64,000 nt of DNA from Octopus bimaculoides. Lineage: Eukaryota. The notes below the pieces were generated by a model. It did no database searches, was not told where the DNA came from, and worked only from the letters and a program-made list of their open reading frames with translations. The stretch spans positions 152,632,668 through 152,696,667 of the forward strand of contig NC_068981.1 of NCBI RefSeq assembly GCF_001194135.2, in the 5' to 3' direction. Shown here one piece after another: positions 4,497 through 62,010 of the stretch. The translations under genes were made by a program, and so were the position numbers. The stretch's first letter is position 1. The number at the start of each line of letters is the position of its first letter.

Positions 4497-5083
4497 ACAC
4501 CGATAGGGCTGCCAAAAATTATGCGTGTTAACAAAGAAAACAACGAACGTATTATACTAGAAACTGGTGAACTAGAGGATGTAGCCGTGTTTATGTATTT
4601 AGGTATTAAGATAACGCCTTCAGGCGGCACCAACGAAGATATTAAGATGAGAATAAGTAAGGCAAGGACCGCTTTTCACCTGTTAAAAAAAGTATGGAGC
4701 GCAAGTGTAATTTCAATAAAGAACAAAATAAGAATTTTTAACACTAACGTAAAAGCGGTGTTATTGTATGGGGCTGAGACATGGCGAACAACAGTTAAGT
4801 CAAATAAGCAAATACAATCATTCATCAACAGATGCTTGCGTAGTATACTTAAAGACACACCAAATGTGCTTTACAGTGGAATCCAGATGGAGATAGAAAA
4901 AAAGGTAGGCCTAAGAACTTGTGGCGTAGATCAACACAAAAGGAACTAGAGAAAGAGGGACATTCATGGCAGAGTATAAGTACAGAAACGAAAAATTATG
5001 CGACATGGAATTCAATTATAAGTGGCCTATACTCCATGTTGGAGGGTTAAAGGAAAAAAAATAAATAAATAAAAAAATAAAAA
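4497..5083 (+). mobile_element. 5'-truncated RTE/BovB-like LINE with A-rich tail and 11-bp TSD
   Basis: ORF 4521-4949 (F.YLG..I...G....DI..RI.KAR.AF..L..VW....LLYGAETW); A-rich tail about 5053-5083; AGGGCTGGCAT at 4486-4496 and 5084-5094. Confidence 0.85.
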
Positions 5084-28541: not shown

Positions 28542-31516
28542 ACACACAAAATTTAGTTTCATTGTTACCGTTAATATCCACCTTTTTAGAAACAGCAACA
28601 TATATTTAAGTATATGTGATTATTTTAGATACAAATTTATTTTTAGTCCTCTAAATATAACTTTGAATATCATATTTAATTCCCATGTCTTTCGCTTTGA
28701 AAACTTCATCTTTATACCAACCCTAATATTGGGTTCCTTGACTGCTGCTTAAATCGACGTTCTTCTAACACTAAGTTTATGAGAATGTACATGTTAACTT
28801 GTTAGTCTTTCACAGAAGTAAATGTTCTCACGAGTTCTTGTATCTGTTACAGTTAAACTCAGACAAATAACATAAATAGAAGTATCAAAAACATAACGAT
28901 ACGACCCTTATATATTTTTACTCATAATCCAAGAACTAGTACTTTAAAACATTTTTTGACTCAGATATTTCCTTTCTGCCGTCTGCTGAGAATGGCTGGC
29001 TGTTTTAGTTGCGCATGTAGTCTAACATAAGATACAGTGATATTCTGAAAACAAGAGTGACGCTAGCCGCTCGGCTTGTATCTTCATTCACGTCCTGTGT
29101 CTTTGAAGTTACTTGTATTTGGTCTCAAGGCGATAAATGTTTTTATTGTGGTTTAGCGCTTAGCCCCTATCGAGCAGACTTATTGAAGATACTACCATGA
29201 TCATGTCTTCTATTTCAGACACTATCTAGGTGACAGTTTAAAGTGTTCTTCCCTTCCAAGCGTAGTCATCCATTATTTGCAATATAAAGGCAAAGTTGTT
29301 ACATTTTTTTACTCATTCCATCTTAACATTTTCTTCCCATTTAAGGTGTTGAACTGAAAGAATCGTTAGCCTGCCAGGCGAAATGTTTAGCGGCATTTCG
29401 CCCGTTCTGAGTTCAAATTCCACCGGGATCGACTTTGCCTTTCATTCTTTCGAGGTCGATAAAATAAGTACCAATTGAACACTGGGTCGATTTAAGCAAC
29501 TTGGCCCCTCCCCCAAACTTGTGCCAAAATTTGAAATCAATATTTTCTTCCAAGTGAGTGACTTTCTAGGCACTCACACATTGTCGCAATTTTTATTTCA
29601 TCTATTTTTTTTTTCTATTTTGCATTTTGACTGTTTCAATCACAAATTTTGTTTATTCCACAACTATATGTAAAAATAAGTCTATATTTTATTAAATCAG
29701 TATTGTGAAGGTTTTGATAGCTTTTATATTTGACGTTTTGTTCTCATTGTGTTAATAACTGTGGCTATGAAAACAGTATTATCTTTCTTTCTGGTCAGAC
29801 TACTATATGTTTTCATTAGATGAATTCAAGTTTAATATAAAAGGAAGAAAATTGTTTTATCATGTCTTGATTATGGTACAAAAAAATCTCAATATTAATT
29901 AGCCAAGCATTATATTATGCAGTGTGTATTCTTATATGAAAAGACATTTTTTTTTTTGCTACCAGGTCAACACCACAATTACCATACTTAAACACTGTGG
30001 CTTCATACAAATACGCTACTTGTAGAAACCTATATTGTTTATGACTCTATTGATGTTTTAGTTATCATAGTGAAACAGTTTTCGGTCTCTCTTTTACCTA
30101 ACATCATACTTTGAAGATTTGTCATATTTATTTATTACCCATCCAAACTACGTTTATCCTTATCCAGTCTCAATAACAAGTAACATGACTTTCTTTCCAT
30201 ATGGTCTATTAGTGACATCAATTTATATATCTTTTAATCAATATCCAGAAGATAATCAAAGACTAAAATATCACTAAATTATTCATCGTAAAACTACTAA
30301 TTTATGGAATATAAACCAAATTTAACACTACGTTTCTATTTCATACGCCACTATATTGATATGTAACGATATGGCAATGGTATATTTCCAGACTTCATAA
30401 ATCTTGTTTGTATATTCTTTATTGTGTTGTTATTTCTACTGTTACTTCGTATTAATTACTATTATTTTTAGTTCCACCTTTAAGGCGACGAGCTAGCAGA
30501 ATCGTTAGCACGCCGGACAAAGTCTGCAGTGGTATCTCGTCTGGCTCTTTAACTTTGAGCTCAAATTCCATCGCGATCGACTTTGTCTTTTTTCCCTTTC
30601 GAAATCGATAAAGTAAGTACTGGGACCGATTTTCTTTCTTCTCTCGAAAATGTTGAGCTTCCGTCAAAATTAGAAAGAATTATTTTAGCTTCTTCTTGAA
30701 AGAACCGCTGGAGTGTCGAACAAAATGCTTTGTGATAATTAAATTTGGTTCTAGGGGGATCTGATAAAATAAGTACAAATCAAATATTAGGATCGATATA
30801 ATCGATTGTTCTCTCATTTGTGGATTTATGTCTGTGCAAGAACAGTGTAATACAGTTCCCTGTATTATCATCATTACTAAACCCTAATTCTTTTTTGTAA
30901 TTCTTGAATGACACTAACATTTTAGTATTTCATTCTGCAAAATTTATTAAGAAAGACAAGTTTATATATTTCAACGATCAGTAAACAATGTAGAAAATTT
31001 CAAATGTTGAATGTATATCATCAATTTCTAATCATAAAAAGTGTCAAAATGCATATAATCCTATGCCATCAATTTAATTACGTTACCTATTGCCCCTATT
31101 TTCTGTATCACATATAATTACTTTTTTCATACAGTGGAAACAAATAGAATATGAGAGAAGTGTTGAAGTAATTGAATTAGTATAATAATAAAGGAATGTA
31201 TATTTTCAAAGATCAATGTCAGTTGTGGAAAGGATGTTATTGCAATTCTGCTTAAATCCCCGAAAAGTAGTTATTGCTTAGGCATAACTATATATTGTAT
31301 GTTAATGACTATGAGCGACGCTACGTGATTACTCACAAAATACTATAAAACATCTTGAATTTATCAATACTAATAAAAGAGAAGAAAAATATTGCGAATG
31401 ATGATGAAAACAAAAAGTGTTACGGTTATTGTTTCATATTATTTGATGAGAAATAAAGAAATATTGTAAAGATAACTTTAAAATACAATATAAGACATCA
31501 TATGTTGCAACAAAAT

Positions 31517-31522
31517 TTTATT
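31517..31522 (-). terminator. Polyadenylation signal of reflectin A
   Basis: AATAAA on the minus strand at a homologous position in the 3' UTR shared by A, B and C. Confidence 0.7.
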
Positions 31523-31638
31523 GATATAAATTTAAATGTGTCCGAATACTGAGGACGTTAACAAAAATTTGTCAAGTTTCCAGTTAACATTAGCCAGTAG
31601 AATTTCCGAAAAGTCTTGTCGTTTGTGTGATTTCAAAA

Positions 31639-31988
31639 TTAAAATCTGTGCATGTTCATCCAGCGCCCATTGAAGTCCATCTCATAGTGAGACATATCAA
31701 AGAATCTTTCTGGGTAGTCGTAGAACCTATGTCCCCAGCTGTAGTTATGGTAGGGATAATGGTTATAGTAATGGCTCCCTCTGTGGTAATGGTTATAACC
31801 AAAGAAAGGATGGGAGTAATGATTGTACATGTCCATCCAGTTACCATCGAAATCCATTTGGTAATGGGACATATCATAGAACATGTCGTAATAGTTGTGG
31901 TACCTACGTCCCTGACTGTAACTGTGGTAAGGGTAGTAACCCGAATGATGATAACCGTGGTAGCCACTGAATGAATGGAAAGGATGAT
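31639..31988 (-). CDS. reflectin: Reflectin locus A, 3' segment (partial; 5' part lost in the N gap 31989-32482)
   Basis: Reads HPFHSFSGYHG...FYDMSHYQMDFDGNWMDMY...YPERFFDMSHYEMDFNGRWMNMHRF*, with two reflectin motifs, a TAA at 31639-31641 and AATAAA about 117 nt downstream. Confidence 0.93.
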
Positions 31989-32553
31989 NNNNNNNNNNNN
32001 NNNNNNNNNNNNNNNNNNNNNNNNNNNNNNNNNNNNNNNNNNNNNNNNNNNNNNNNNNNNNNNNNNNNNNNNNNNNNNNNNNNNNNNNNNNNNNNNNNNN
32101 NNNNNNNNNNNNNNNNNNNNNNNNNNNNNNNNNNNNNNNNNNNNNNNNNNNNNNNNNNNNNNNNNNNNNNNNNNNNNNNNNNNNNNNNNNNNNNNNNNNN
32201 NNNNNNNNNNNNNNNNNNNNNNNNNNNNNNNNNNNNNNNNNNNNNNNNNNNNNNNNNNNNNNNNNNNNNNNNNNNNNNNNNNNNNNNNNNNNNNNNNNNN
32301 NNNNNNNNNNNNNNNNNNNNNNNNNNNNNNNNNNNNNNNNNNNNNNNNNNNNNNNNNNNNNNNNNNNNNNNNNNNNNNNNNNNNNNNNNNNNNNNNNNNN
32401 NNNNNNNNNNNNNNNNNNNNNNNNNNNNNNNNNNNNNNNNNNNNNNNNNNNNNNNNNNNNNNNNNNNNNNNNNNNNNNNNNNTTTGTCAAGTTTCCAGTT
32501 AACATTAGCCAGTAGAATTTCCGAAAAGTCTTGTCGTTTGTGTGATTTCAAAA

Positions 32554-32853
32554 TTAAAATCTGTGCATGTTCATCCAGCGCCCATTGAAGTCCATCTCAT
32601 AGCCGGACATATCCATAAACATATCTGGGAAATTCATGAAATAATCAAATCTATGGAACCTATCGAAATCATGGAAATTGTGATTGTTGTACATAGATCT
32701 ACCATAGTAACTATCTTGGTCATGATATCTGCCATAGAAGCCATAGGATCTGGGATCAACCATTCTTCCATAAGAATCCATGTATCTGCCATGGAAGTCC
32801 ATTGACATCATGTGCATTGGTTCCATTCTACCGTTGTATATGTGTCCGTACAT
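32554..32853 (-). CDS. reflectin: Reflectin locus A, 5' segment; as assembled a 99-aa short reflectin (MYGHIYNGRMEPMHMMSMDFHGRYMDSYGRMVDP...FPDMFMDMSGYEMDFNGRWMNMHRF*)
   Basis: Contains the reflectin N-terminal motif MEPM..MSMDF(H/Q)GRYMDS.GRMVDP and an MDMSGY.MD repeat motif. First ATG is at 32853 (the track start at 32865 is a TTG). An in-frame TGA lies just inside the upstream acceptor, so the upstream part of the exon is UTR. Confidence 0.93.
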   Translation of the reverse strand: MYGHIYNGRMEPMHMMSMDFHGRYMDSYGRMVDPRSYGFYGRYHDQDSYYGRSMYNNHNFHDFDRFHRFDYFMNFPDMFMDMSGYEMDFNGRWMNMHRF

Positions 32854-32900
32854 GATGGAATACAAAAACTGGTTACCAATTTCTGTAAGTTCAATTCAAG

Positions 32901-33077
32901 CTGAAATTGGAAAATATGAGGGAGTTGCTGAAAAATTATACAATATATATCTGAAAAATTTTATGGTTTGCATTTTCTTCCCATTAATGTGCTCTTTACA
33001 AATCTACCTATTTATACAGGCAAACAGATAACATATAGACAACGTATAACTTCGCACACATTTATGAATGCACGTAC

Positions 33078-40728: not shown

Positions 40729-42146
40729 AATTTTATTACTTTTGTGAATAGGAATTTAGCATAAATTTGTTGCCGTAAAAATCTCTTCATTTAGTAAATG
40801 GTCGATATTTTCTTTAACTTGCTGTTACGTTGCTAGTTTATATTTCCTCTTTAATCTTCATTAATATCCTGAAACATATTTCTGTATTTTCTGATTTATC
40901 TGGTGTTACCTATTGGTCAGTATTGCAGCGTTTCCGTTAAAATATATTTTATCACATTTTGTAAGATGTATGGTCCAATATTTTTAAAAGCAACATTTTC
41001 TTCATAAATTAACTAAACTATTAGATTACTTTAGTTTTATTTGAAATATATTTCATATTCGTTAGATGATATTTGAATTCTGCTCAATAATTTTAGATTT
41101 CAGCCACCTCAACAAACAGACTTAACTGATAAAACTCGATAACTTTAAAGGTAAAAAAAAAAGGAGAATTATGTGAAAACTGAAAATATTATTTAGTAAA
41201 TATATTTAGTATATATATCAGCAAATCCTATATTTATCTTCCTAGAGAAATCTGTGGAGTGCTTTGGACAGGTGGAAAAGTTGCTGTACAGTATTTGTAT
41301 TTATAATGAATTCTAATCGTATTTTAGTGCGCGCAAGTTTACCCAAATGTAGGAAGAAAAAAATTACTGAATATTAACTGTTATTAATTAACAAAGCAAC
41401 CGACCTAGTTGTGTTAATGATGTCTTTATACCTCTTGTGCTCTACATAGACAATTGTAACTTCAAATATGTATTAAGGTAAGCTTAATGATTTTTGCCGC
41501 CGTTTCAAAGACTTTTAACTAATGTAAAAAAACTGCTACTTTTACAACTACTGCGAACAGAAAAAAAGGCCTCTGGCTTGACTTGGTTTCGAATGTTACT
41601 GGGTTCGTTTAAGTAACCGCATGATTGATTCTTCATTCCACAGAGAAATATAAGCTTGTAATTATTTATAGTTAATAAATGTGCTGAAATCAATGAATCA
41701 ATTATTTTTATTTACCTAAATAATACTTTGCTGGCTATAAATTCAATTAATTAATTGTTATTGTACTAAACAATGTATATGGATAGATTAAATGTGTAAC
41801 AAAGTAAGCTTAATTGCTTTTTCTTTTTTTTTTTTTTTNNNNNNNNNNTTTTTTTTTTTTTTTTTTTTGCAGACATCATGCAACGTTGGACAAAAATAAG
41901 CAAATGCATGCTGTTATTGATCTCTCAATGACTGAAAAATGTCATTGACTTTACTTAGTTTCAGAATTTATTGAGTTCTCGTTAGTTATTCCGTACTTGT
42001 CTCTTCTTACTACGGATAGATTATAGCTTATAGCTATTGATAACCACTAAATATGGTAGCTTTGATAAATCAAAATTTATACGCACACATACATACACAT
42101 ATATAGACATATACATTTATGTTGCTTTCTCTGTCTTCAAACATAG
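40722..42146 (+). other. Predicted 5'-UTR intron of reflectin B (about 1.4 kb)
   Basis: GT donor at 40722; pyrimidine tract plus CTTCAAACATAG ending at 42146, aligning with the C acceptor. Confidence 0.55.
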
Positions 42147-42164
42147 ATACACGCACATATATAT

Positions 42165-43828
42165 ATGTCTATGGACTTCCAAGGCAGATACATGGATTCT
42201 TATGGAAGAATGGTAGATCCCAAGTGCTATGGTTTCTATGGCAGATATTCTGACAATGAGAGATATTACAGTAGATCTATGTACAACTATTACGGTTTCT
42301 ATGATAACGATAGGTTCCATAGACACGGTTTTTTCATGGACTTCCCAGAGAGGTTTCTGGATATGTCCAGATATCAGATGGATAAGAATGGAAAGTTGAT
42401 GAACATGCAAGGGTACAACTCCAACCCCTACTGTTATATGTTCAACACTTCAAGACATGGCTACTACCCTGGCTACCGCTATGGTCGTAATTAGTTCTAT
42501 TCTGAAAAATTCATGGACATGTCTCACTATCAAATGGACATGTATGGCTGATACATGAACAGAAATAGTCGCCTCTACAACCCACATTACAACTTTTACA
42601 AGCGTTATATAAACTCTCTATTTTGGAATTACTTCTTTAAGCAGTACCTTGAGACATTATTTGACCTGTCCAGCTACCAGATGGACATGAATGACCAGTA
42701 CATGGGCAGAGATGGGTGTCACTGTAACCTATACTACAGCAGTAACAGGCGTACTAGATACTGTCCATTTCAGAATTGCTGTCTTAAGAACAATTCTGGG
42801 ACATTTACGGACATGTCCAACAACGTGATAGACATGAATATCCGATACATGGACAGAAATGGTCCCCTCTGCAATGCATATTACAACTTTTACAAGCGTT
42901 ACATAAACTGTCCGTTTTAGGATTACTTCTTTAAGCAGTATCCCGAGGCATTATTTAGCCTGTCTAACTGCCAGGTGGACATGAATGATCAATACATGGA
43001 CACAGATGGTTGTCACTGTAACTCATATTACAACAATGACAGGCGTACTAGGTACTGTCCATTTCAGAATTACTACTTTAAGAACAATTCTGGGACATTT
43101 ACGGACATGTCCAACAACGAAATGGACATGAATGGCCAATACATGAACAGAAATGGTCGTGACTACAAACCATATTACAACTACTACGGGCGTTATAAAA
43201 AATGTCCGTTTTGGACTTACTTCTTCAAGCACTATCCCGAAGCATTATTTGACCGGTCCAATTATCAGATGGACATGAATGGCTGATACATGGACAGAAA
43301 TAGTCGTCACTGCAAGCCATATTCCTTCTGCTACGGGCGCTATAAAAACTGTGCATTTCGGACTTCTTTAAGCACGAGATGGACATGAATGGCCAATACA
43401 TGGACGGAAATGAATGTCGCTGTAATCCATATTACAACAGTAAGAGGCGTAATAGAAACTGTCCATTTCGGAATTAATACTTTAAAAACAATTCTGAGAG
43501 ATTCATGAACATGTCCAACTATTGGATGAATTTTGATGGTTATTGGATGAATATGTCCTATTAACAAATGGGTTTTTATGGTAACTGAATAGACATGTAT
43601 AATCATTATTCCCATAATTTATTTGGTTATAACCATTACCACAGGGGGAGCCACTACTACAACTATTATCCCTACTATAACTACAGCTGGAGACATAGGT
43701 TCTACGTCTACCCAGTAAGACTCTTTGATATGTTTCATTACCAGGTGGCTTTCAACGGACGCTGGATGAACATGAATATATTTGTAATCACAAAAACACC
43801 AAAACTTTTCGGAAATCTTATTGGCTAA
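42165..43828 (+). pseudogene. reflectin: Reflectin locus B: internally expanded, disrupted reflectin (probable pseudogene, or a truncated 109-aa product)
   Basis: Starts MSMDFQGRYMDSYGRMVDP. Track ORFs 42165, 42555 and 42975 are in one frame, separated by stops TAG 42492, TGA 42549, TAG 42918 and TGA 43284. Deletions of 4 and 33 nt near 43365-43378 shift the frame. Further stops are TAA 43475, TAA 43562 and TGA 43586. The 3' end is homologous to A and C, but the native stop is lost. Confidence 0.9.
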
Positions 43829-43897
43829 TGTTAACTTGAAATTTATTACAAATTTTCTTTAATGTCCTCAGCATTTGGATTCATTTAAATTTATATC

Positions 43898-43903
43898 AAT
43901 AAA
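43898..43903 (+). terminator. Polyadenylation signal of reflectin B
   Basis: AATAAA in the same ATATCAATAAAA context as in A and C. Confidence 0.6.
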
Positions 43904-44516
43904 AAATCGTCGCAACGAAAGATGCCTTATACCGTATTTTATAATTTTTTATTTTTCGTAATATGCAATTGATCAATGTAATGCTGAATATTTTCATAAG
44001 CTTCTTAGAATTATACTAATTCAAAAACTTCGGCAATTCTCCACATTCACGATAAGTAAGGACAAAGATGCGGTCAACAAATTGTTCTCTATTCAGTGCA
44101 CAACGATAAGAAACAGAGTTAAATTAAACTGATGGTTTAACTTCAGTTTAAACTCTTTTCAGTTTAGAAATAGAGGACATACATTCTGGCATTTACATTT
44201 TTTAGATTATTTGCTGTCACCTGAAAGATATAAACACGTCTTTATAAATGAATTTTCTTGACTAAAATACCACAATGTTAGCGCCGTTCAAAAATGCGAC
44301 AAATAGTTGAAGCTTAGTTTTGATTGTAAGAGAAGGAACAGAAATAATAGTAAATGATAGGAAGTAAGAGCAATAGTGGAATAACATGATACTGAAGAAT
44401 TGCTGATCTGGGTGTATATACACCATTTGTTAACAAGCGAGATATATTCTCCGTGACAAAACGCAGTGAGTAGCTTGTTCCCCCAGTTTGAACGTGCATC
44501 AAGCACATTCGGACTA

Positions 44517-47577: not shown

Positions 47578-48126
47578 CGATTTAAATAAGAGCTAAAAGA
47601 TGATCAATTGTAAAAACTTTATTATGACCTATGATCATTTCGATGCAATATCCAGATCAATTCATGCATATTATAAAATATGGAATATTGNNNNNNNNNN
47701 NNNNNNNNNNNNNNNNNNNNNNNNNNNNNNNNNNNNNNNNNNNNNNNNNNNNNNNNNNNNNNNNNNNNNNNNNNNNNNNNNNNNNNNNNNNNNNNNNNNN
47801 NNNNNNNNNNNNNNNNNNNNNNNNNNNNNNNNNNNNNNNNNNNNNNNNNNNNNNNNNNNNNNNNNNNNNNNNNNNNNNNNNNNNNNNNNNNNNNNNNNNN
47901 NNNNNNNNNNNNNNNNNNNNNNNNNNNNNNNNNNNNNNNNNNNNNNNNNNNNNNNNNNNNNNNNNNNNNNNNNNNNNNNNNNNNNNNNNNNNNAGAAAAA
48001 ACCGTTAGGTATTTAAAATATTAAAAATATATTATTTTACATAAGTTAATGGTCAAATTAATAAGAATTTTGGTACGTTTGATAACAGATACAATATTTT
48101 TACCAAATTTTGGTATAAATCTATAA

Positions 48127-54675: not shown

Positions 54676-55002
54676 TTCTTACATGTAGGATAACATTTCC
54701 ATAGTACTTAAAAAATGGAAAACTTAAATTATTCAGCATATTTTATACTACTTCATTAATATACGACCACAAAAATATTATTTACTTTCCTGTTTGCTTC
54801 CCAACTACATGTTTCCGAGTTCAATCACAATGCTTCGCACTTTGGACAAGTGTCTGCTATTGTAGCCTCAGGCCGACAAAAGTCTTGTGAGTGGATTTGG
54901 TAGATAAAAACTGAAAGACACTTGTCGTATACATACATACATACATACATACATTAAATAAAAAGACAACAAGCTGAAAATATGACATACCTCTTTTACT
55001 CT

Positions 55003-55410
55003 TTTACTCTTTTACTCTTTTACTTGTTCCAGTCTTTTGACTGTGGCCATGCTGGAGCACCGCCTTTAGTCGAGCAAATCGACCCCAGGACTTATTCTTT
55101 AGAAGCCTAGTACTTATTCTATCGGTCTCTTTTGCCGAACCGCTAAGTTACGGGGACATAAACACACCAGCATCGGTTGTCAAGCGATGTTGGGGGGACA
55201 AACACAGACACACAAACACATACACACATACATATGTATATACATATATACGACGGGCTTATTTCAGTTTCTGTCTACCAAATCCACTCACAAGGCTTTG
55301 GTCGGCCCGAGGCTATAGTAGAAGACACTTGCCCAAGATGCCACGCAGTGGGACTGAACCCGGGACCATGTGGTTGGTAAGCAAGCTACTTACCACACAG
55401 CCACTCCTAC
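55003..55410 (-). mobile_element. Full-length tRNA-derived SINE with (GAGTAAAA)n tail
   Basis: Head GGCTGTGTGGTAAGTAGCTTGCTT..CAACCACATGGTCCCGGGTTCAGTCCC; tail seen as (CTCTTTTA)n on the plus strand. Confidence 0.9.
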
Positions 55411-55463
55411 GCCTACCTGTATATATATAATTCATAAAAACGTGTAGTAAATGAACATATGAA

Positions 55464-56384: not shown

Positions 56385-57594
56385 CATATGAATATATACT
56401 AAATACACAGAAGGTCACTAATTCCTCTTCAGTTATCGGCCAGAGGGTCAAAGCGCAATTTCTGCCATTATCGATAATATTGCTTCCACTCTGGAAGCAG
56501 CGGCAAGAAACTTGCCGGGAATTGGACAAAAGCATAACAAGACGAGACGGGTTCGAGACGAGACTGATAGTAAACGGACGAGGGACAAAACAATAAACAG
56601 AATAGGGCCAAACGAAAGTGTGTGTGTGTGTGTGTGTCTGTGTTTGTCACCCACCACCGCTTGACAAACGGCGTCAGTGTATTTAAGTTCTTCTAAGCTA
56701 TCGGTTCGGGAAAAAAGACCGAGAAAATATTATCAGGTTTTAAAATAAGTACTTTGGTCGATTCGTTCGACTTAAAATTCGTGAAGGTGGTATCCCAGCA
56801 TGCCTGCAGTCTAGTGACTGAAACAAGTAACAGAGGAAAAAAGATAGAAAATGGTGAAGAATTTTGTGCAGATTATTTGTTTTTTGTATTGAGTTTGAAT
56901 CTAATGGAACTGATTTGCTTATCACTCGTATTTTACGCTGGAAACTAAATGTATGAAAGTAGCAAGCAATAGATAGTAAATATTCTTTTCTACTCTTGGC
57001 ACAAGGCTCAAAATTTATGGGGAGAGGGTCAGTCCATTAGATCGACCCTAATACGCAACTGGTACTTAATTTATCGACACCGAAAGGATGAAAGGCAAAG
57101 TCGACCTCGGCGGAATTTGAACTCAGAACGTAACGACAGACGAAATACTGCTAAGCATTTCGCCTGGCGTGCTAACGTTTCTAATTTCTTTACTGCCCAC
57201 AAGGGGCTACACTCAGAGGGGACAAACAAGGACAGACAAACGGATTAAGTCGATTATATCGACCCAGTGCGTAACTGGTACTTAATTTATCGGCCCCGAA
57301 AGGATGAAAGGCAAAGTCGACCTCGGCAGAATTTGAACTCAGAACGTAAAGGCAGACGAAATACCGCTAAGCATTTCGCCCGGCGTGCTAACGTTTCTGC
57401 CAGCTCGCCGCCTTATAGTTAGTGAATATTAAATACTATAAACTGGCATATCGACCAACCTAATAGTTCTAGCAACGTTTTTATAGCTTTTGTTGCTCAT
57501 AGAAAGAAACAGCTATAGCCTTAAATATCTTCTATGTGTCAGTTAAAAAAACTTGTTAAAACAAAAGATTTCAGACAAATGTAAACAAACACAG

Positions 57595-57915
57595 GCGCAG
57601 GGGTGGCTGTGTAGTAAGAAGCTTGCTTCACAACCACATGGTTCCGGGTTCAGTCCCACTGCGAAGCACGTTGGGCAAGTGTCTTCTACTATAGCCTCGG
57701 GCTATATATATATAAAAGTATATATATATAAAAGTATTTGTGTGTCTGTGTTTCTCCCTCACCATCGCTTGACAACCGATGTTGGTGTGTTTACGTCCCC
57801 GTAACAGTGGTTCAGCAAAAGAGCCCGATAGAATAAGTCCTGGGTTCGACTAATTCAACTAAAAGGCAGTGTCCCACATGGCCGCTGTCAAATGGCTGAA
57901 ACAAGTAAAAAAGTA
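57595..57915 (+). mobile_element. tRNA-derived SINE (same family as 55003-55410)
   Basis: GGCTGTGTAGTAAGAAGCTTGCTTC.CAACCACATGGTTCCGGGTTCAGTCCC...GAAACAAGTAAAA. Confidence 0.85.
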
Positions 57916-59215: not shown

Positions 59216-59938
59216 GTGACTGTTTTAATTTTTAAGTTTCACCAATATTCTTTTAACCTATCGGTCACATTATAACCAACTTCATCTGTTGGTGTTTTCT
59301 TTTTTGTATGTGTGTGTATATGTGTGTATACATACATACATGTATGTATGTATGTATGTATGTATGTATGTANNNNNNNNNNNNNNNNNNNNNNNNNNNN
59401 NNNNNNNNNNNNNNNNNNNNNNNNNNNNNNNNNNNNNNNNNNNNNNNNNNNNNNNNNNNNNNNNNNNNNNNNGAGAGATATATATGCATACGCATACATA
59501 TGCATGAATATATATGTGTATATATTTTTCATAATATTAGAGTTGACTAGTTTATTTAACCAGTGGAGAAAGTTTCATTTCTAAAGTTTAATTAGCAGTG
59601 ATACCTTATTAAAAAGTCAGCATGATCAGGTAGTAATTTGCATTGGATGTAAAAATGACAAGAAATGAAGTTTTAATATTTAAATTTCTTGTTGGTAGAA
59701 CTCTTATAACAATCTAATGTTCAGAAAGCAAATATAATGGTAGATGGTAGCATTTGTATACGTAAGGAAATATTACAAAGTGAGGGGAAATAGTTAGGTA
59801 TTTGAACATAAGTATTATATACGTATTTAGACCCACAGAAAACCGTCAGAAAATAAATATTCTTTTGTACTTTTCACTAATTCCTGCATTTATCCTTCAA
59901 TTTCAGACACAAAGTTTGGTAACCAATTCTCTTCCGAA

Positions 59939-61136
59939 ATGTTCGGGCACAGGTACAACGGTAGAATGGAACCAATGCACATGATGTCAATGGACTTCCA
60001 TGGCAGATACATGGATTCTTATGGAAGAATGGTTGATCCCAGATCCTATGGCTTCTATGGCAGATATCATGACCAAGATAGGTACTATGGTAGATCTATG
60101 TACAACAATCACAATTCCCATGATTTCGATAGGTTCCATAGATTTGATTATTTCATGAATTTCCCAGATATGTTTATGGATATGTCCGGTTATCAGATGG
60201 ACATGTATGGAAGGTGGATGGACATGCACGGACACTACTCTAGCCCCTACTCCTANNNNNNNNNNNNNNNNNNNNNNNNNNNNNNNNNNNNNNNNNNNNN
60301 NNNNNNNNNNNNNNNNNNNNNNNNNNNNNNNNNNNNNNNNNNNNNNNNNNNNNNNNNNNNNNNNNNNNNNNNNNNNNNNNNNNNNNNNNNNNNNNNNNNN
60401 NNNNNNNNNNNNNNNNNNNNNNNNNNNNNNNNNNNNNNNNNNNNNNNNNNNNNNNNNNNNNNNNNNNNNNNNNNNNNNNNNNNNNNNNNNNNNNNNNNNN
60501 NNNNNNNNNNNNNNNNNNNNNNNNNNNNNNNNNNNNNNNNNNNNNNNNNNNNNNNNNNNNNNNNNNNNNNNNNNNNNNNNNNNNNNNNNNNNNNNNNNNN
60601 NNNNNNNNNNNNNNNNNNNNNNNNNNNNNNNNNNNNNNNNNNNNNNNNNNNNNNNNNNNNNNNNNNNNNNNNNNNNNNNNNNNNNNNNNNNNNNNNNNNN
60701 NNNNNNNNNNNNNNNNNNNNNNNNNNNNNNNNNNNNNNNNNNNNNNNNNNNNNNNNNNNNNNNNNNNNNNNNNNNNNNNNNNNNNNNNNNNNNNNNNNNN
60801 NNNNNNNNNNNNNNNNNNNNNNNNNNNNNNNNNNNNNNNNNNNNNNNNNNCAGTTACAGTCAGGGACGTAGGTACCACAACTATTACGACATGTTCTATG
60901 ATATGTCCCATTACCAAATGGATTTCGATGGTAACTGGATGGACATGTACAATCATTACTCCCATCCTTTCTTTGGTTATGACCATTACCACAGAGGGAG
61001 CCATTACTATAACCATTATCCCTACCATAACTACAGCTGGGGACATAGGTTCTACGACTACCCAGAAAGATTCTTTGATATGTCTCACTATGAGATGGAC
61101 TTCAATGGGCGCTGGATGAACATGCACAGATTTTAA
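59939..61136 (+). CDS. reflectin: Reflectin locus C (middle lost in the N gap 60256-60850)
   Basis: 5' part MFGHRYNGRMEPMHMMSMDFHGRYMDSYGRMVDP...FMDMSGYQMDMYGRWMDMHG; 3' part ...YPERFFDMSHYEMDFNGRWMNMHRF*. Acceptor TTCAATTTCAG ends at 59906; AATAAA at 61251. Confidence 0.95.
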
Positions 61137-61250
61137 TTTTGAAATCACACAAACGACAAGACTTTTCGGAAATTCTACTGGCTAATGTTAACTGGAAACT
61201 TGACAATTTTTTTAGCGTCCTCAATATTCGGACACATTGAAATTGATATC

Positions 61251-61256
61251 AATAAA
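61251..61256 (+). terminator. Polyadenylation signal of reflectin C
   Basis: AATAAA about 115 nt after the stop, in the same context as A. Confidence 0.7.
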
Positions 61257-62010
61257 ACTTTGTTGCAACATATGAATATCTTGTGTTATGTTTTAATATT
61301 TTCTTTACAATTTTGTTTAATTCGTAAAATAAAAAATAATCAATGTAAGACTGACTGTTTTCATAAACTTATTAGAATTATATTTATTAAGGTAATTCAA
61401 GAGTTCCTTCCTATTCAATTTGTTACCACTATATTTAAGTAAAGAAACTATAGTTTTATACGATATATAAATTGTATTGTTATTAGTTTGCGACTGTAGG
61501 TGACAGATTTAGATTAATTTGAAGTGTTTAATTGCTGCTTGAACTCCTTTACCTTTAGAAATTGAAGGCATACGTTGTGACTTTTTAAACTTTATAGAAC
61601 CTTTTGCTGATTATTGAAAGGTATGAACATTTTTGTTACCAATGTGTTTTAACAAATAAAATGCAGCAATTTTAGAGTCATTAAAAAAATACAACAGAGT
61701 TAAAACAATGATAATACAATGAAATGAAAAAGCAATTCTAGGAAGTAAGAATGATGGTGAGATAAAATCACAGTAAAAAATATTTGAATAAGAGTTATTG
61801 AATTTGAAAGGGCGCTCATAGTCACATCGTCGCTCTTTACTGTAGTTGTATATAAAATAGAAACGAACTGATAAATTTGGTTTATATTTGGGATAAAACT
61901 TACCAAATGTATCAAATACACTAAAATTAATTTATTTATCATCGAGCTTTTGATCATCTTCCGGATATTGACTGAAGTGATTTATATNNNNNNNNNNNNN
62001 NNNNNNNNNN

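What the first reader, a model, noticed from the sequence alone, without database searches (positions are those of the whole stretch)
42555..43540. Reflectin B grew by a higher-order tandem repeat: 147-bp (49-codon) units in an A-B-A-B-A-A(del)-B array
Seen: unit-start ATGs at 42555, 42702, 42849, 42996, 43143 and 43290 (exact 147-bp spacing), then 43400 (a 110-bp unit after 4-nt and 33-nt deletions). Alternate units are more alike (type A: M.RN.R.YNP.YNFYKRY..CPFW.YFFK.YPE.LFD.S.YQMDMN; type B: M..DGCHCN.YY...RRTRYCPFQN...KNNSGTFTDMSNN.MDMN), giving a 294-bp dimer period. Inference: unequal crossing-over amplified a two-motif cassette. This directly records how reflectin motif number, which should affect assembly and optical tuning, is generated.
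Basis: seen in the sequence. Interest (0 to 1): 0.75.

Follow-up and report, generated by a model that had tools for sequence, protein, structure and literature searches.

The report
Tandem-repeat array inside a dead reflectin gene
The 147/294-bp repeat array is real and records stepwise duplication of a reflectin domain, but it lies in a reflectin pseudogene broken by seven premature stops and a frameshift, so it shows how motif number can change without showing any effect on optics.

Summary
Tandem Repeats Finder reports a 147-bp period (5.7 copies, 68% match) and a stronger 294-bp period (2.7 copies, 81%).

- **The gene is dead.** The locus (42165-43828, + strand) has premature stops at 42492, 42549, 42918, 43284, 43475, 43562 and 43586. 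It also has a -37-nt frameshift in unit 6, no 25-codon leader, and a mutated native stop. Only 1 of 10 motif remnants fits the published reflectin motif.
- **A and B are sisters.** All seven units form one clade (bootstrap 100). They probably derive from the single 49-codon "domain 2" of intact paralogues, which show no such DNA repeat.
- **The order of events is readable.** One unit duplicated into A and B (K about 0.4-0.5). The A-B dimer then duplicated twice (K about 0.3, then 0.15-0.2), and one extra A copy arose.
- **The timing against gene death is unresolved.** No disabling lesion is shared between units, so the duplications probably came first. Substitution-pattern tests could not confirm this.

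This is an ordinary duplicated pseudogene that keeps a neat small higher-order repeat. Interest is low to moderate.

The parts
42165..43828 (+). Reflectin pseudogene, from the first base of homology to the first stop after the lost native stop.
   Evidence: 81-82% DNA identity over 42165-42688 to intact reflectin-like genes of O. bimaculoides, O. sinensis and O. vulgaris, and 79% to the Argonauta hians gene. 81-83% identity over 43551-43900 to the neighbouring reflectin genes, including their 3' flank.
42085..42164 (+). CA/TA-rich low-complexity DNA in place of the first 25 codons (MNRF...MEPM leader) and the upstream region.
   Evidence: The alignment with four intact 5' ends loses homology immediately upstream of ATGTCTATGGAC. 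TRF reports (ACACATATAT)n at 42085-42113.
42165..42224 (+). Remnant of the conserved reflectin N-terminal motif (MSMDFQGRYMDSYGRMVDPK).
   Evidence: Changes specific to the pseudogene branch over the whole 390-nt 5' region compared (42165-42554) are 12 synonymous and 13 non-synonymous, more synonymous than neutrality predicts (p=0.006), which indicates past constraint.
42399..42554 (+). Domain 1 (linker plus motif), with premature stops TAG 42492-42494 and TGA 42549-42551.
   Evidence: The paralogue codons at these two sites are TGG (Trp) and CGA (Arg). This domain groups with domain 1 of the paralogues (bootstrap 100).
42555..42701 (+). Unit 1, type A, 147 bp, open frame.
   Evidence: It lies at the position of domain 2 in the gapless alignment to the P0001 gene.
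42702..42848 (+). Unit 2, type B, 147 bp, open frame.
   Evidence: K2P to unit 4 is 0.153.
42849..42995 (+). Unit 3, type A, with premature TAG at 42918-42920; the sibling units have TGG there.
42996..43142 (+). Unit 4, type B, open frame.
43143..43289 (+). Unit 5, type A, with premature TGA at 43284-43286; the homologous boundary codons are CGA, CAA or CAG.
   Evidence: K2P to units 1 and 3 is 0.24-0.27.
43290..43399 (+). Unit 6, type A, 110 bp. Deletions of 4 nt and 33 nt give a net -37 nt, which shifts the frame.
   Evidence: Its first 76 nt are closest to unit 5 (K2P 0.21, against 0.33-0.42 to the other units).
43400..43546 (+). Unit 7, type B, the most divergent edge unit, with premature TAA at 43475-43477.
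   Evidence: K2P to units 2 and 4 is 0.29-0.35.
43547..43828 (+). Terminal domain of the same type as the neighbouring genes. It has premature TAA 43562 and TGA 43586. The native stop is replaced by GTA at 43784-43786, so reading runs on to TAA 43826.
   Evidence: compared with the C-termini of the neighbouring genes.
31639..32865 (-). Context: two neighbouring reflectin loci. One is a short ORF (32554-32865, ATG at 32853). The other is the 3' half of a second gene (31639-31988), lying behind assembly gap 31989-32482.
59939..61136 (+). Context: a neighbouring reflectin gene with an open frame on both sides of assembly gap 60256-60850.

Best explanation
The locus 42165-43828 (+) is a duplicated, non-processed pseudogene of the reflectin family, sitting in a tandem reflectin cluster of an octopod. 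Its middle holds a small higher-order tandem repeat that was built in steps.

(1) One 49-codon 'linker plus reflectin motif' unit, at the position of domain 2 in intact paralogues, duplicated in register. The two copies diverged into types A and B (K2P about 0.40-0.48).
(2) The A-B dimer (294 bp) duplicated. This left an older pair now represented by U5 and U7 (K2P about 0.24-0.35 to the others).
(3) The dimer duplicated again, giving U1-U2 and U3-U4 (K2P 0.15-0.20).
(4) One A monomer (U6) arose next to U5 (K2P 0.21) and later lost 4 nt and 33 nt.

The mechanism is inferred to be unequal crossing-over or replication slippage between in-register repeats. The exact 147-bp register and the absence of indels in the first five units fit this.

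The gene is now non-coding. It has seven nonsense mutations: three TGG to TAG/TGA, two CGA to TGA, and two read as Tyr TAC/TAT to TAA. It also has one frameshift, a lost leader and a lost stop codon. Shown directly: the array, its hierarchy and the lesions. Inferred: the recombination mechanism and the order of events. Unresolved: whether the amplification happened while the protein was still made. I lean slightly towards 'before or around inactivation', because no lesion is shared between units.
For: - **Array and hierarchy:** TRF periods 147 and 294, autocorrelation, identity matrix, and the NJ tree with bootstraps 100 (all units), 92 (A), 90 (B), 88 (U1,U3) and 100 (U2,U4). K2P ladder.
- **Lineage-specific:** the intact paralogue genes in L001 (O. 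bimaculoides) and L004 (Argonauta hians) show no 147/294-bp repeat by TRF. They carry one 49-codon domain 2.
- **Pseudogene:** stop list and frameshift, ancestral codons TGG and CGA at the first two stops, 5' truncation and lost native stop.
- **Erosion:** only 1 of 10 motif remnants fits [MF]D-x5-MD-x5-MD, against 4-6 in intact reflectins. Residues rare in reflectins (A, I, L, K, V, T, E, C) make up 22.6% of the array, against 2.5-12% in intact reflectins.
- **Duplicated at the DNA level, not retroposed:** homology continues into the 3' flank (43650-44021 at 75% and 44113-44294 at 69% to the downstream flank of gene 3).
- **No intact counterpart found:** no protein among 5.8 billion clusters or 1.84 billion representatives resembles the array more than 34-56%. 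None of the pseudogene's ORFs is on record as a called gene product.
- **Lesion count fits long neutral decay:** about 1.1 new stops are expected per 98 codons at the observed dimer divergence.
Against: - The assembly is gap-rich (13 N runs) and no reads were available, so the lesions cannot be verified independently.
- Branch-specific changes in the N-terminal region are enriched for synonymous changes (12 of 25, p=0.006). The gene was therefore under constraint for part of its separate history, and its death may be fairly recent.
- Support for 'domain 2' as the source unit is modest: bootstrap 60 plus equal length and collinearity. Pairwise identities to domains 1, 2 and 3 all fall in 62-72%.
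- The monophyly of A and B could partly reflect gene conversion rather than common descent.
Confidence: 0.8

Rival explanations
1. The array expanded only after the gene had died, as neutral satellite-like amplification of non-coding DNA. In that case it says nothing about how functional reflectins gain motifs.
For: Differences between units show no excess of synonymous changes: 14 synonymous and 31 non-synonymous, against a neutral expectation of 28% synonymous (p=0.39). NG86 dN/dS is 0.40, against a neutral simulation median of 0.48. Differences spread evenly over the three codon positions (12/18/14). The B-type motif had already lost its first Met/Phe (FTDMS) before the last dimer duplication. 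The stop count matches neutral decay over about the age of the array.
Against: The control comparison shows this test has no power. Domain 2 of two intact orthologues (O. bimaculoides against Argonauta) looks just as neutral, with 8 synonymous and 26 non-synonymous changes (p=0.40). Every stop and the frameshift are private to one unit. The two boundary TGAs sit at a CGA codon with a CpG and have CGA, CAA or CAG siblings, so they look like independent hits. If the array had grown from an already broken template, copied lesions would be expected.
Confidence: 0.4
2. The gene is intact and functional, and the stops and frameshift are sequencing or assembly errors.
For: The draft assembly has many gaps, including inside the neighbouring reflectin genes. 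Repetitive coding DNA is prone to error.
Against: Nine independent lesions in 1.66 kb would all have to be errors. They go along with motif erosion at 9 of 10 sites, composition drift, loss of the 5' leader and a mutated stop codon. At least five of the seven nonsense changes are transitions from the paralogue or sibling codon, including two at a CpG, which is typical of real decay. The other two were not checked against a paralogue codon with a tool. The array lies in an ungapped contig.
Confidence: 0.05
3. The transcript is rescued by cephalopod A-to-I RNA editing (UAG, UGA or UAA to UGG) or by read-through, and yields an unusual Cys-rich, motif-expanded reflectin.
For: In principle every premature stop can be edited to Trp. 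At three sites (42492, 42918, 43586) the paralogue or sibling codon is TGG, so editing would restore the ancestral residue. That cephalopods edit RNA heavily is general knowledge and was not tested here.
Against: The -37-nt frameshift cannot be edited away. The two TAA stops would each need two edits. At two sites the ancestral residue was Arg, and at two it is read as Tyr. There is no leader or recognisable upstream region, and no transcript-derived ORF was found in the protein collections. No expression data were available.
Confidence: 0.02
4. The A/B pattern comes mainly from gene conversion between alternate units, not from the duplication order, so the inferred history is unreliable.
For: Concerted evolution is reported for octopod reflectin clusters (Argonauta argo CDSs are 97% identical, PMC9635652). 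The three non-pseudogene copies in this window are 92-94% identical to one another. Unit 6 mixes A-like and B-like stretches.
Against: The K2P ladder is consistent between the A series and the B series: U1-U3 0.20 with U2-U4 0.15, and U5 0.24-0.27 with U7 0.29-0.35. Whole dimers copied together would give this. Conversion would still need a pre-existing tandem array.
Confidence: 0.15

Closest known systems
Reflectin genes of octopods: O. bimaculoides LOC106875838 (XP_014779614, 344 aa), its O. vulgaris/O. sinensis orthologue (CAI9716227 / XP_029640368), and Argonauta hians GAB1597764 (447 aa)
   Same: They share the N-terminal motif (MSMDFQGRYMDSYGRMVDPK), the first motif, domain 1 and a 49-codon domain 2, in the same order. 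DNA identity is 79-82% over the first 525 bp. They are single-exon genes in tandem clusters (PMC9635652).
   Different: The intact genes have one domain 2 and no DNA-level 147/294-bp repeat. They also have open frames and 4-5 strict reflectin motifs. The window locus has seven domain-2-derived units and is disabled.
The general model that reflectins were built by repeated duplication of motif-plus-linker blocks (Crookes et al. 2004; Guan et al. 2017, as summarised in PMC9779258)
   Same: The unit duplicated here is exactly one linker plus one reflectin motif. Iterated in-register duplication is the process the model invokes.
   Different: Here the duplication is young enough to see at the DNA level, and it works on a two-unit cassette. 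It is seen in a dead copy, so no consequence for function is shown.
Higher-order repeats and intragenic cassette amplification elsewhere, such as alpha-satellite dimers, involucrin, filaggrin, apolipoprotein(a) kringle IV and spidroin ensemble repeats (from general knowledge)
   Same: Two monomer types alternate. The multimer copies are more alike (81%) than neighbouring monomers (63-71%). The edge unit is the most divergent.
   Different: The array is very small (about 3 dimers, 1 kb), lies within a gene, and has stopped homogenising (15-35% divergence between copies).
Concerted evolution and tandem duplication of whole reflectin genes (Argonauta argo cluster, PMC9635652; Euprymna scolopes clusters, PMC6386654)
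   Same: The cluster setting is the same. The window holds three further reflectin copies that are 92-94% identical to one another.
   Different: Those reports concern duplication of whole genes. This finding concerns duplication of domains inside one copy.

Membership tests
Reflectin (functional family member) | Conserved N-terminal motif (MEPM..MDFQGRYMDS.GRMVDP.) | tested here: met
   MSMDFQGRYMDSYGRMVDPK is present at 42165-42224 and is nearly identical to P0001, P0002 and P0003. The preceding MEPM and leader are missing.
Reflectin (functional family member) | Several reflectin motifs fitting (M/F)D(X)5MD(X)5MD(X)3/4 (definition quoted in PMC9635652) | tested here: not met
   Only 1 of 10 remnants fits the strict pattern, and that one contains a stop. 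Intact reflectins give 4-6. Ten degenerate remnants remain; within the array they are 49 codons apart.
Reflectin (functional family member) | Uninterrupted single-exon reading frame | tested here: not met
   Seven premature stops, a -37-nt frameshift and a lost native stop.
Reflectin (functional family member) | Skewed composition: rich in Y, M, R, N, G, S, D and poor in A, I, L, K, V, T, E, C | tested here: inconclusive
   Y, M, R, N, G, S, D make up 62.5% overall, against 63-75% in intact reflectins. The normally rare residues make up 18.5% overall and 22.6% in the array, against 2.5-12%.
Reflectin (functional family member) | Expression in reflective tissues | not testable with these tools
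   No expression data. No matching ORF in the protein collections.
Reflectin-derived duplicated (non-processed) pseudogene | DNA homology to functional paralogues that extends beyond the coding region, within the gene cluster | tested here: met
   81-83% identity to neighbouring genes over 43551-43900, and 69-75% further into the 3' flank as far as 44294. The locus lies between reflectin genes at 31.6-32.9 kb and 59.9-61.1 kb.
Reflectin-derived duplicated (non-processed) pseudogene | Multiple independent disabling lesions | tested here: met
Reflectin-derived duplicated (non-processed) pseudogene | Neutral pattern of substitution | tested here: inconclusive
   The array looks neutral, but so does domain 2 of the intact orthologues. 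The N-terminal part shows past constraint.
Higher-order tandem repeat | Head-to-tail units of constant length | tested here: met
   Six starts exactly 147 bp apart. TRF reports 0% indels across 42526-43362.
Higher-order tandem repeat | Multimer copies more alike than neighbouring monomers, and monomer types forming separate clades | tested here: met
   81% at period 294 against 68% at period 147. A-A is 76-83% and B-B 73-86%, against 63-76% for A-B (63-71% without the truncated unit 6). A clade bootstrap 92, B clade 90.
Higher-order tandem repeat | At least two complete multimers | tested here: met
   U1-U2 and U3-U4 are complete. U5(+U6)-U7 is a third, disrupted dimer. TRF counts 2.7 copies.

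The most novel reading that the evidence does not exclude
The A-B cassette was amplified while the gene still encoded a protein. Intact alleles or orthologues with 2-4 cassettes, and unusually Cys-rich linkers, would then still exist in related octopods. This locus would give a natural series of reflectins that differ only in motif number, usable to test how motif number sets assembly size. A still less likely version, at about 2%, is that A-to-I editing of the stops rescues a product in this species.
Probability: 0.15. Interest if true: 0.55.

Novelty: new member of a known kind. Interest (0 to 1): 0.25.

Why it matters
Reflectins are modular proteins whose motif number and linker charge are thought to control assembly and refractive index. 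How motif number changes in evolution is usually inferred from very old, diverged repeats. In this locus the duplication steps can still be read at the DNA level: monomer to A/B dimer, then two dimer duplications, then a monomer insertion. That makes it a clean small example of in-register unequal exchange acting on reflectin domains.

Its value is limited because the copy is dead, so no link to protein assembly or optics can be drawn. It would matter more if an intact orthologue carrying the same array were found. For genome annotation, the practical point is that this locus should be called a pseudogene and not a reflectin gene.

Tried and rejected
1. **B units as domain 3 of intact reflectins.** The shared 'GCH.N' suggested this. 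I rejected it because all seven units are monophyletic (bootstrap 100). The Cys in B comes from CGT to TGT in a domain-2-like GRHCN.
2. **dN/dS and synonymous-fraction tests to date the duplication against gene death.** The array looks neutral. The control on intact orthologues looks equally neutral for domain 2, so the test is uninformative.
3. **Finding the same ORFs in other assemblies or runs by exact look-up.** None is on record.
4. **Finding an intact relative of the array.** Two word-indexed searches and one exhaustive HMMER search returned only ordinary reflectins at 34-56% identity.
5. **Walking the O. bimaculoides, O. sinensis, O. vulgaris and Argonauta hians clusters from annotated genes (L001-L005).** No synteny with the window beyond interspersed repeats, and no A/B array in those 21-kb stretches. 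The window's species was not identified.
6. **Unit 6 as an A-head/B-tail fusion.** Its 26-nt tail is one mismatch from both the A and the B versions, so this stays undecided.
7. **A displaced 5' exon or leader upstream of 42165.** None found.
8. **Pfam.** There is no reflectin family to score against.
9. **Literature searches.** Two were wasted because 'reflectin' at word start also matches 'reflecting'. The only paper in the library holding both 'reflectin' and 'pseudogene' as whole words is a bobtail-squid regulatory study that I did not open.
Full report

Yes. Reading 42300-43800 shows ATG-initiated units at 42555, 42702, 42849, 42996, 43143 and 43290, spaced exactly 147 bp apart, and a further unit start at 43400. 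Unit 6 is 110 bp and aligns to the others with one 4-nt gap and one 33-nt gap.

Tandem Repeats Finder gives two periods:
- period 147: 42526-43362, 5.7 copies, 68% matches, no indels;
- period 294: 42532-43323, 2.7 copies, 81% matches, score 1060.

Self-identity over 42400-43545 peaks at lags 294 (62%), 147 (57%), 441 and 588. The background is 26 +/- 3.7%, so these peaks have z values of 6.5-9.7. Same-type units are 73-86% identical. Units of different type are 63-76% identical, or 63-71% if the truncated unit 6 is left out.

The array lies in an ungapped contig, since the nearest N runs are 41839-41848 and 47691-47993. Its copies differ by 14-37%, so assembler collapse or inflation is unlikely. 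I had no reads to check this.

**2. What is the locus?**

The window is a low-GC (33%), gap-rich stretch of an octopod genome that holds a reflectin cluster. It contains four reflectin loci:
- a short ORF at 32554-32865 (- strand);
- the 3' half of another gene at 31639-31988 (- strand), behind a gap;
- the locus in question at 42165-43828 (+ strand);
- a gene at 59939-61136 (+ strand), interrupted by a gap.

The closest proteins to the conceptual translation are ordinary octopod reflectin-like proteins:
- O. bimaculoides XP_014779614 (P0001, 344 aa);
- its O. vulgaris/O. sinensis orthologue (P0003);
- Argonauta hians GAB1597764 (P0002, 447 aa).

Identity is only 54-56% over 44-47% of the query. 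At the DNA level, 42165-42688 aligns without gaps to those genes at 79-82%. The 3' end, 43551-43900, aligns at 81-83% to the neighbouring genes in the window and continues into their 3' flank. The locus is therefore a DNA-level duplicate inside the cluster, not a retrocopy.

**3. The reading frame is broken.

In the reflectin frame there are these lesions:
- TAG at 42492;
- TGA at 42549;
- TAG at 42918, inside unit 3;
- TGA at 43284, the next-to-last codon of unit 5;
- a net -37-nt loss in unit 6 that shifts the frame;
- in the new frame, TAA at 43475 (unit 7), TAA at 43562 and TGA at 43586.

At the first two stops the paralogue has TGG and CGA. At 42918 the sibling units have TGG.

The boundary codon is CGA in one unit, TGA in two and CAA or CAG in four. 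That is the pattern expected from CpG decay on either strand.

The first 25 codons of intact genes (MNRF...MEPM) are replaced by CA/TA low-complexity DNA. The native stop (TAA in the neighbouring genes) is GTA at 43784-43786, so reading runs on to 43826.

Only 1 of 10 motif remnants still fits the published reflectin motif (M/F)D(X)5MD(X)5MD, and that one contains a stop. Intact reflectins score 4-6 (motif definition as quoted in PMC9635652). Residues that reflectins normally avoid (A, I, L, K, V, T, E, C) make up 22.6% of the array, against 2.5-12% in intact reflectins.

No gene product matching any ORF of the locus is on record. No protein in the 5.8-billion or 1.84-billion libraries resembles the array closely. 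I conclude with about 0.8-0.85 confidence that this is a reflectin pseudogene.

**4. Where did the units come from?**

Intact paralogues have, after the N-terminal motif and the first reflectin motif:
- a 52-codon domain 1;
- a 49-codon domain 2 (YMDKSGRHCNPYY...FMDMSSYQMDIGGR);
- then other domains.

Unit 1 sits at the position of domain 2 in the gapless alignment and has the same length. TRF finds no 147/294-bp repeat in the intact O. bimaculoides or Argonauta genes, so the array is specific to this lineage.

I built a neighbour-joining tree of the seven units together with domains 1-3 of three intact genes. Its main results:
- all seven units form one clade (bootstrap 100);
- within it there is an A clade (92) and a B clade (90);
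- (U1,U3) has bootstrap 88 and (U2,U4) has 100;
- the clade sits next to domain 2, but with only 60% support.

Pairwise identities to domains 1-3 are all 62-72% and do not discriminate. So B is not a different ancestral domain, and A and B are sisters. The B-type 'GCHCN' is the domain-2 'GRHCN' with CGT changed to TGT.

**5. History read from the distances.**

| Comparison | K2P |
|---|---|
| A against B | 0.40-0.48 |
| U5 against U1/U3 | 0.24-0.27 |
| U7 against U2/U4 | 0.29-0.35 |
| U1 against U3 | 0.20 |
| U2 against U4 | 0.15 |
| U6 (first 76 nt) against U5 | 0.21 |

The A series and the B series give matching ladders, as expected if whole dimers were copied. The sequence of events is:
- a monomer became A plus B;
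- A-B became A-B plus A-B;
- the first dimer duplicated again;
- one extra A copy arose beside U5.

The perfect 147-bp register points to in-register unequal exchange or slippage. This is an inference.

For scale, O. bimaculoides and O. sinensis differ by dS 0.09 in the paralogous gene and by 6.4-8.5% in its flank. Even the youngest duplication is therefore about twice as old as that species split, if rates are similar.

**6. Did the array grow in a working gene?**

This could not be settled.

Between units, the synonymous fraction equals the neutral expectation: 31% against 28% (p=0.39). The U1-U5 and U3-U5 comparisons give similar results. NG86 dN/dS is 0.40, against a neutral simulation median of 0.48. 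Differences are spread evenly across codon positions.

That looks like duplication in dead DNA. The control removes the force of the argument, however. Domain 2 of two intact orthologues (O. bimaculoides against Argonauta) also shows no synonymous excess, with 8 synonymous and 26 non-synonymous changes (p=0.40). Domain 1 and the whole gene do show one. Domain 2 is simply under weak sequence constraint.

On the other side:
- Changes specific to the pseudogene branch in the N-terminal 390 nt are 12 synonymous and 13 non-synonymous (p=0.006 against neutrality). The gene was therefore constrained for part of its separate history.
- No disabling lesion is shared between units by descent, so the template was open when it was copied.
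- Against a very recent death, the stop count is about what neutral decay over the age of the array predicts: roughly 1.1 new stops per 98 codons at the dimer divergence.

I rate 'amplified after death' at about 0.4 and 'amplified before or around death' at about 0.6.

**7. Comparison with what is known.**

That reflectins are built of repeated motif-plus-linker blocks, and probably arose by repeated duplication, is established (summarised in PMC9779258, citing Crookes 2004 and Guan 2017). That octopod reflectins are single-exon genes in tandem clusters showing concerted evolution is reported for Argonauta argo (PMC9635652) and other cephalopods (PMC6386654).

The only paper in the searchable library that holds both 'reflectin' and 'pseudogene' as whole words is a bobtail-squid regulatory study, which I did not open. 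I therefore found no report there of a reflectin pseudogene or an intragenic higher-order repeat.

The feature is a new example of known things: a duplicated pseudogene and an intragenic higher-order repeat. It is not a new kind of element. I do not file it as a functional reflectin, because the open-frame and motif criteria were tested and not met. I file it as reflectin-derived.

**8. Verdict.**

Cassette amplification is real. 'Reflectin B grew' as a statement about a functional protein is not supported.
- Interest is 0.25. It would rise to about 0.5-0.55 if an intact orthologue with the same array exists, which I put at roughly 0.15.

The decisive checks are long reads over the locus, orthologous loci in other octopod genomes, and RNA-seq. 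None of these could be run with the tools available.

Noticed in passing
window 32554-32865 (- strand; ATG at 32853): An open 99-aa reflectin ORF made of the N-terminal part plus a single hybrid motif (FPDMFMDMSGY|EMDFNGRWMNMHRF*). The first and last reflectin motifs appear to have been joined in register, deleting all internal domains. It could be a real contraction, the reciprocal of the expansion in the pseudogene, or an assembler collapse of repeats. Its 3' end is a distinct copy, 93.8-93.9% identical to the other two.
   Followed up: partly
window 31989-32482 and 60256-60850: The assembly gaps inside the two apparently intact reflectin genes fall exactly on their internal repeat region. 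The working copies may carry internal repeats too similar for the short-read assembly to resolve. Only the diverged pseudogene array assembled through.
   Followed up: no
window 31400-31988, 32483-32950 and 59850-61400: The three non-pseudogene reflectin copies are 92-94% identical to one another, including the 3' flank, while the pseudogene is only 81-83% identical to them. This points to young tandem duplicates or concerted evolution, as reported for Argonauta argo (97%, PMC9635652).
   Followed up: partly
window 42549, 42696, 42843, 42990, 43137, 43284 and 43394 (unit-boundary codon): The homologous boundary codon is CGA once, TGA twice and CAA or CAG four times. This is the signature of CpG decay on both strands. 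The two youngest dimers differ by 38 transitions and 7 transversions.
   Followed up: partly
window 43505-43588: Read by eye from the translation, not scored with a tool. At the 3' edge of the array two motif remnants lie back to back with a 42-nt period and no linker between them (MNMSNYWMNFDGYW / MNMSY*QMGFYGN*).
   Followed up: no
window 4521-4949 (+ strand): A 142-aa ORF matches Pfam DUF6451 (E=1.3e-16). It may be a fragment of an interspersed element, but I did not check this.
   Followed up: no
window 54997-55416 (also about 56600-57900); L001 12048-12509; L002 5801-6193; L003 426-826: An interspersed repeat family is shared with the reflectin regions of O. bimaculoides (91-94% identity) and O. 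sinensis/O. vulgaris (85-90%). This suggests the window comes from an Octopus-like octopodid, but the species was not identified.
   Followed up: partly
L005 10001-11329 (O. bimaculoides CM046601.1, about 152.74 Mb): The reflectin XP_014779611 is named 'TBC1 domain family member 5 homolog A' in RefSeq, although its sequence is a seven-domain reflectin. It lies about 37 kb from XP_014779614 on the same chromosome. Name-based searches for octopus reflectins will miss it.
   Followed up: partly
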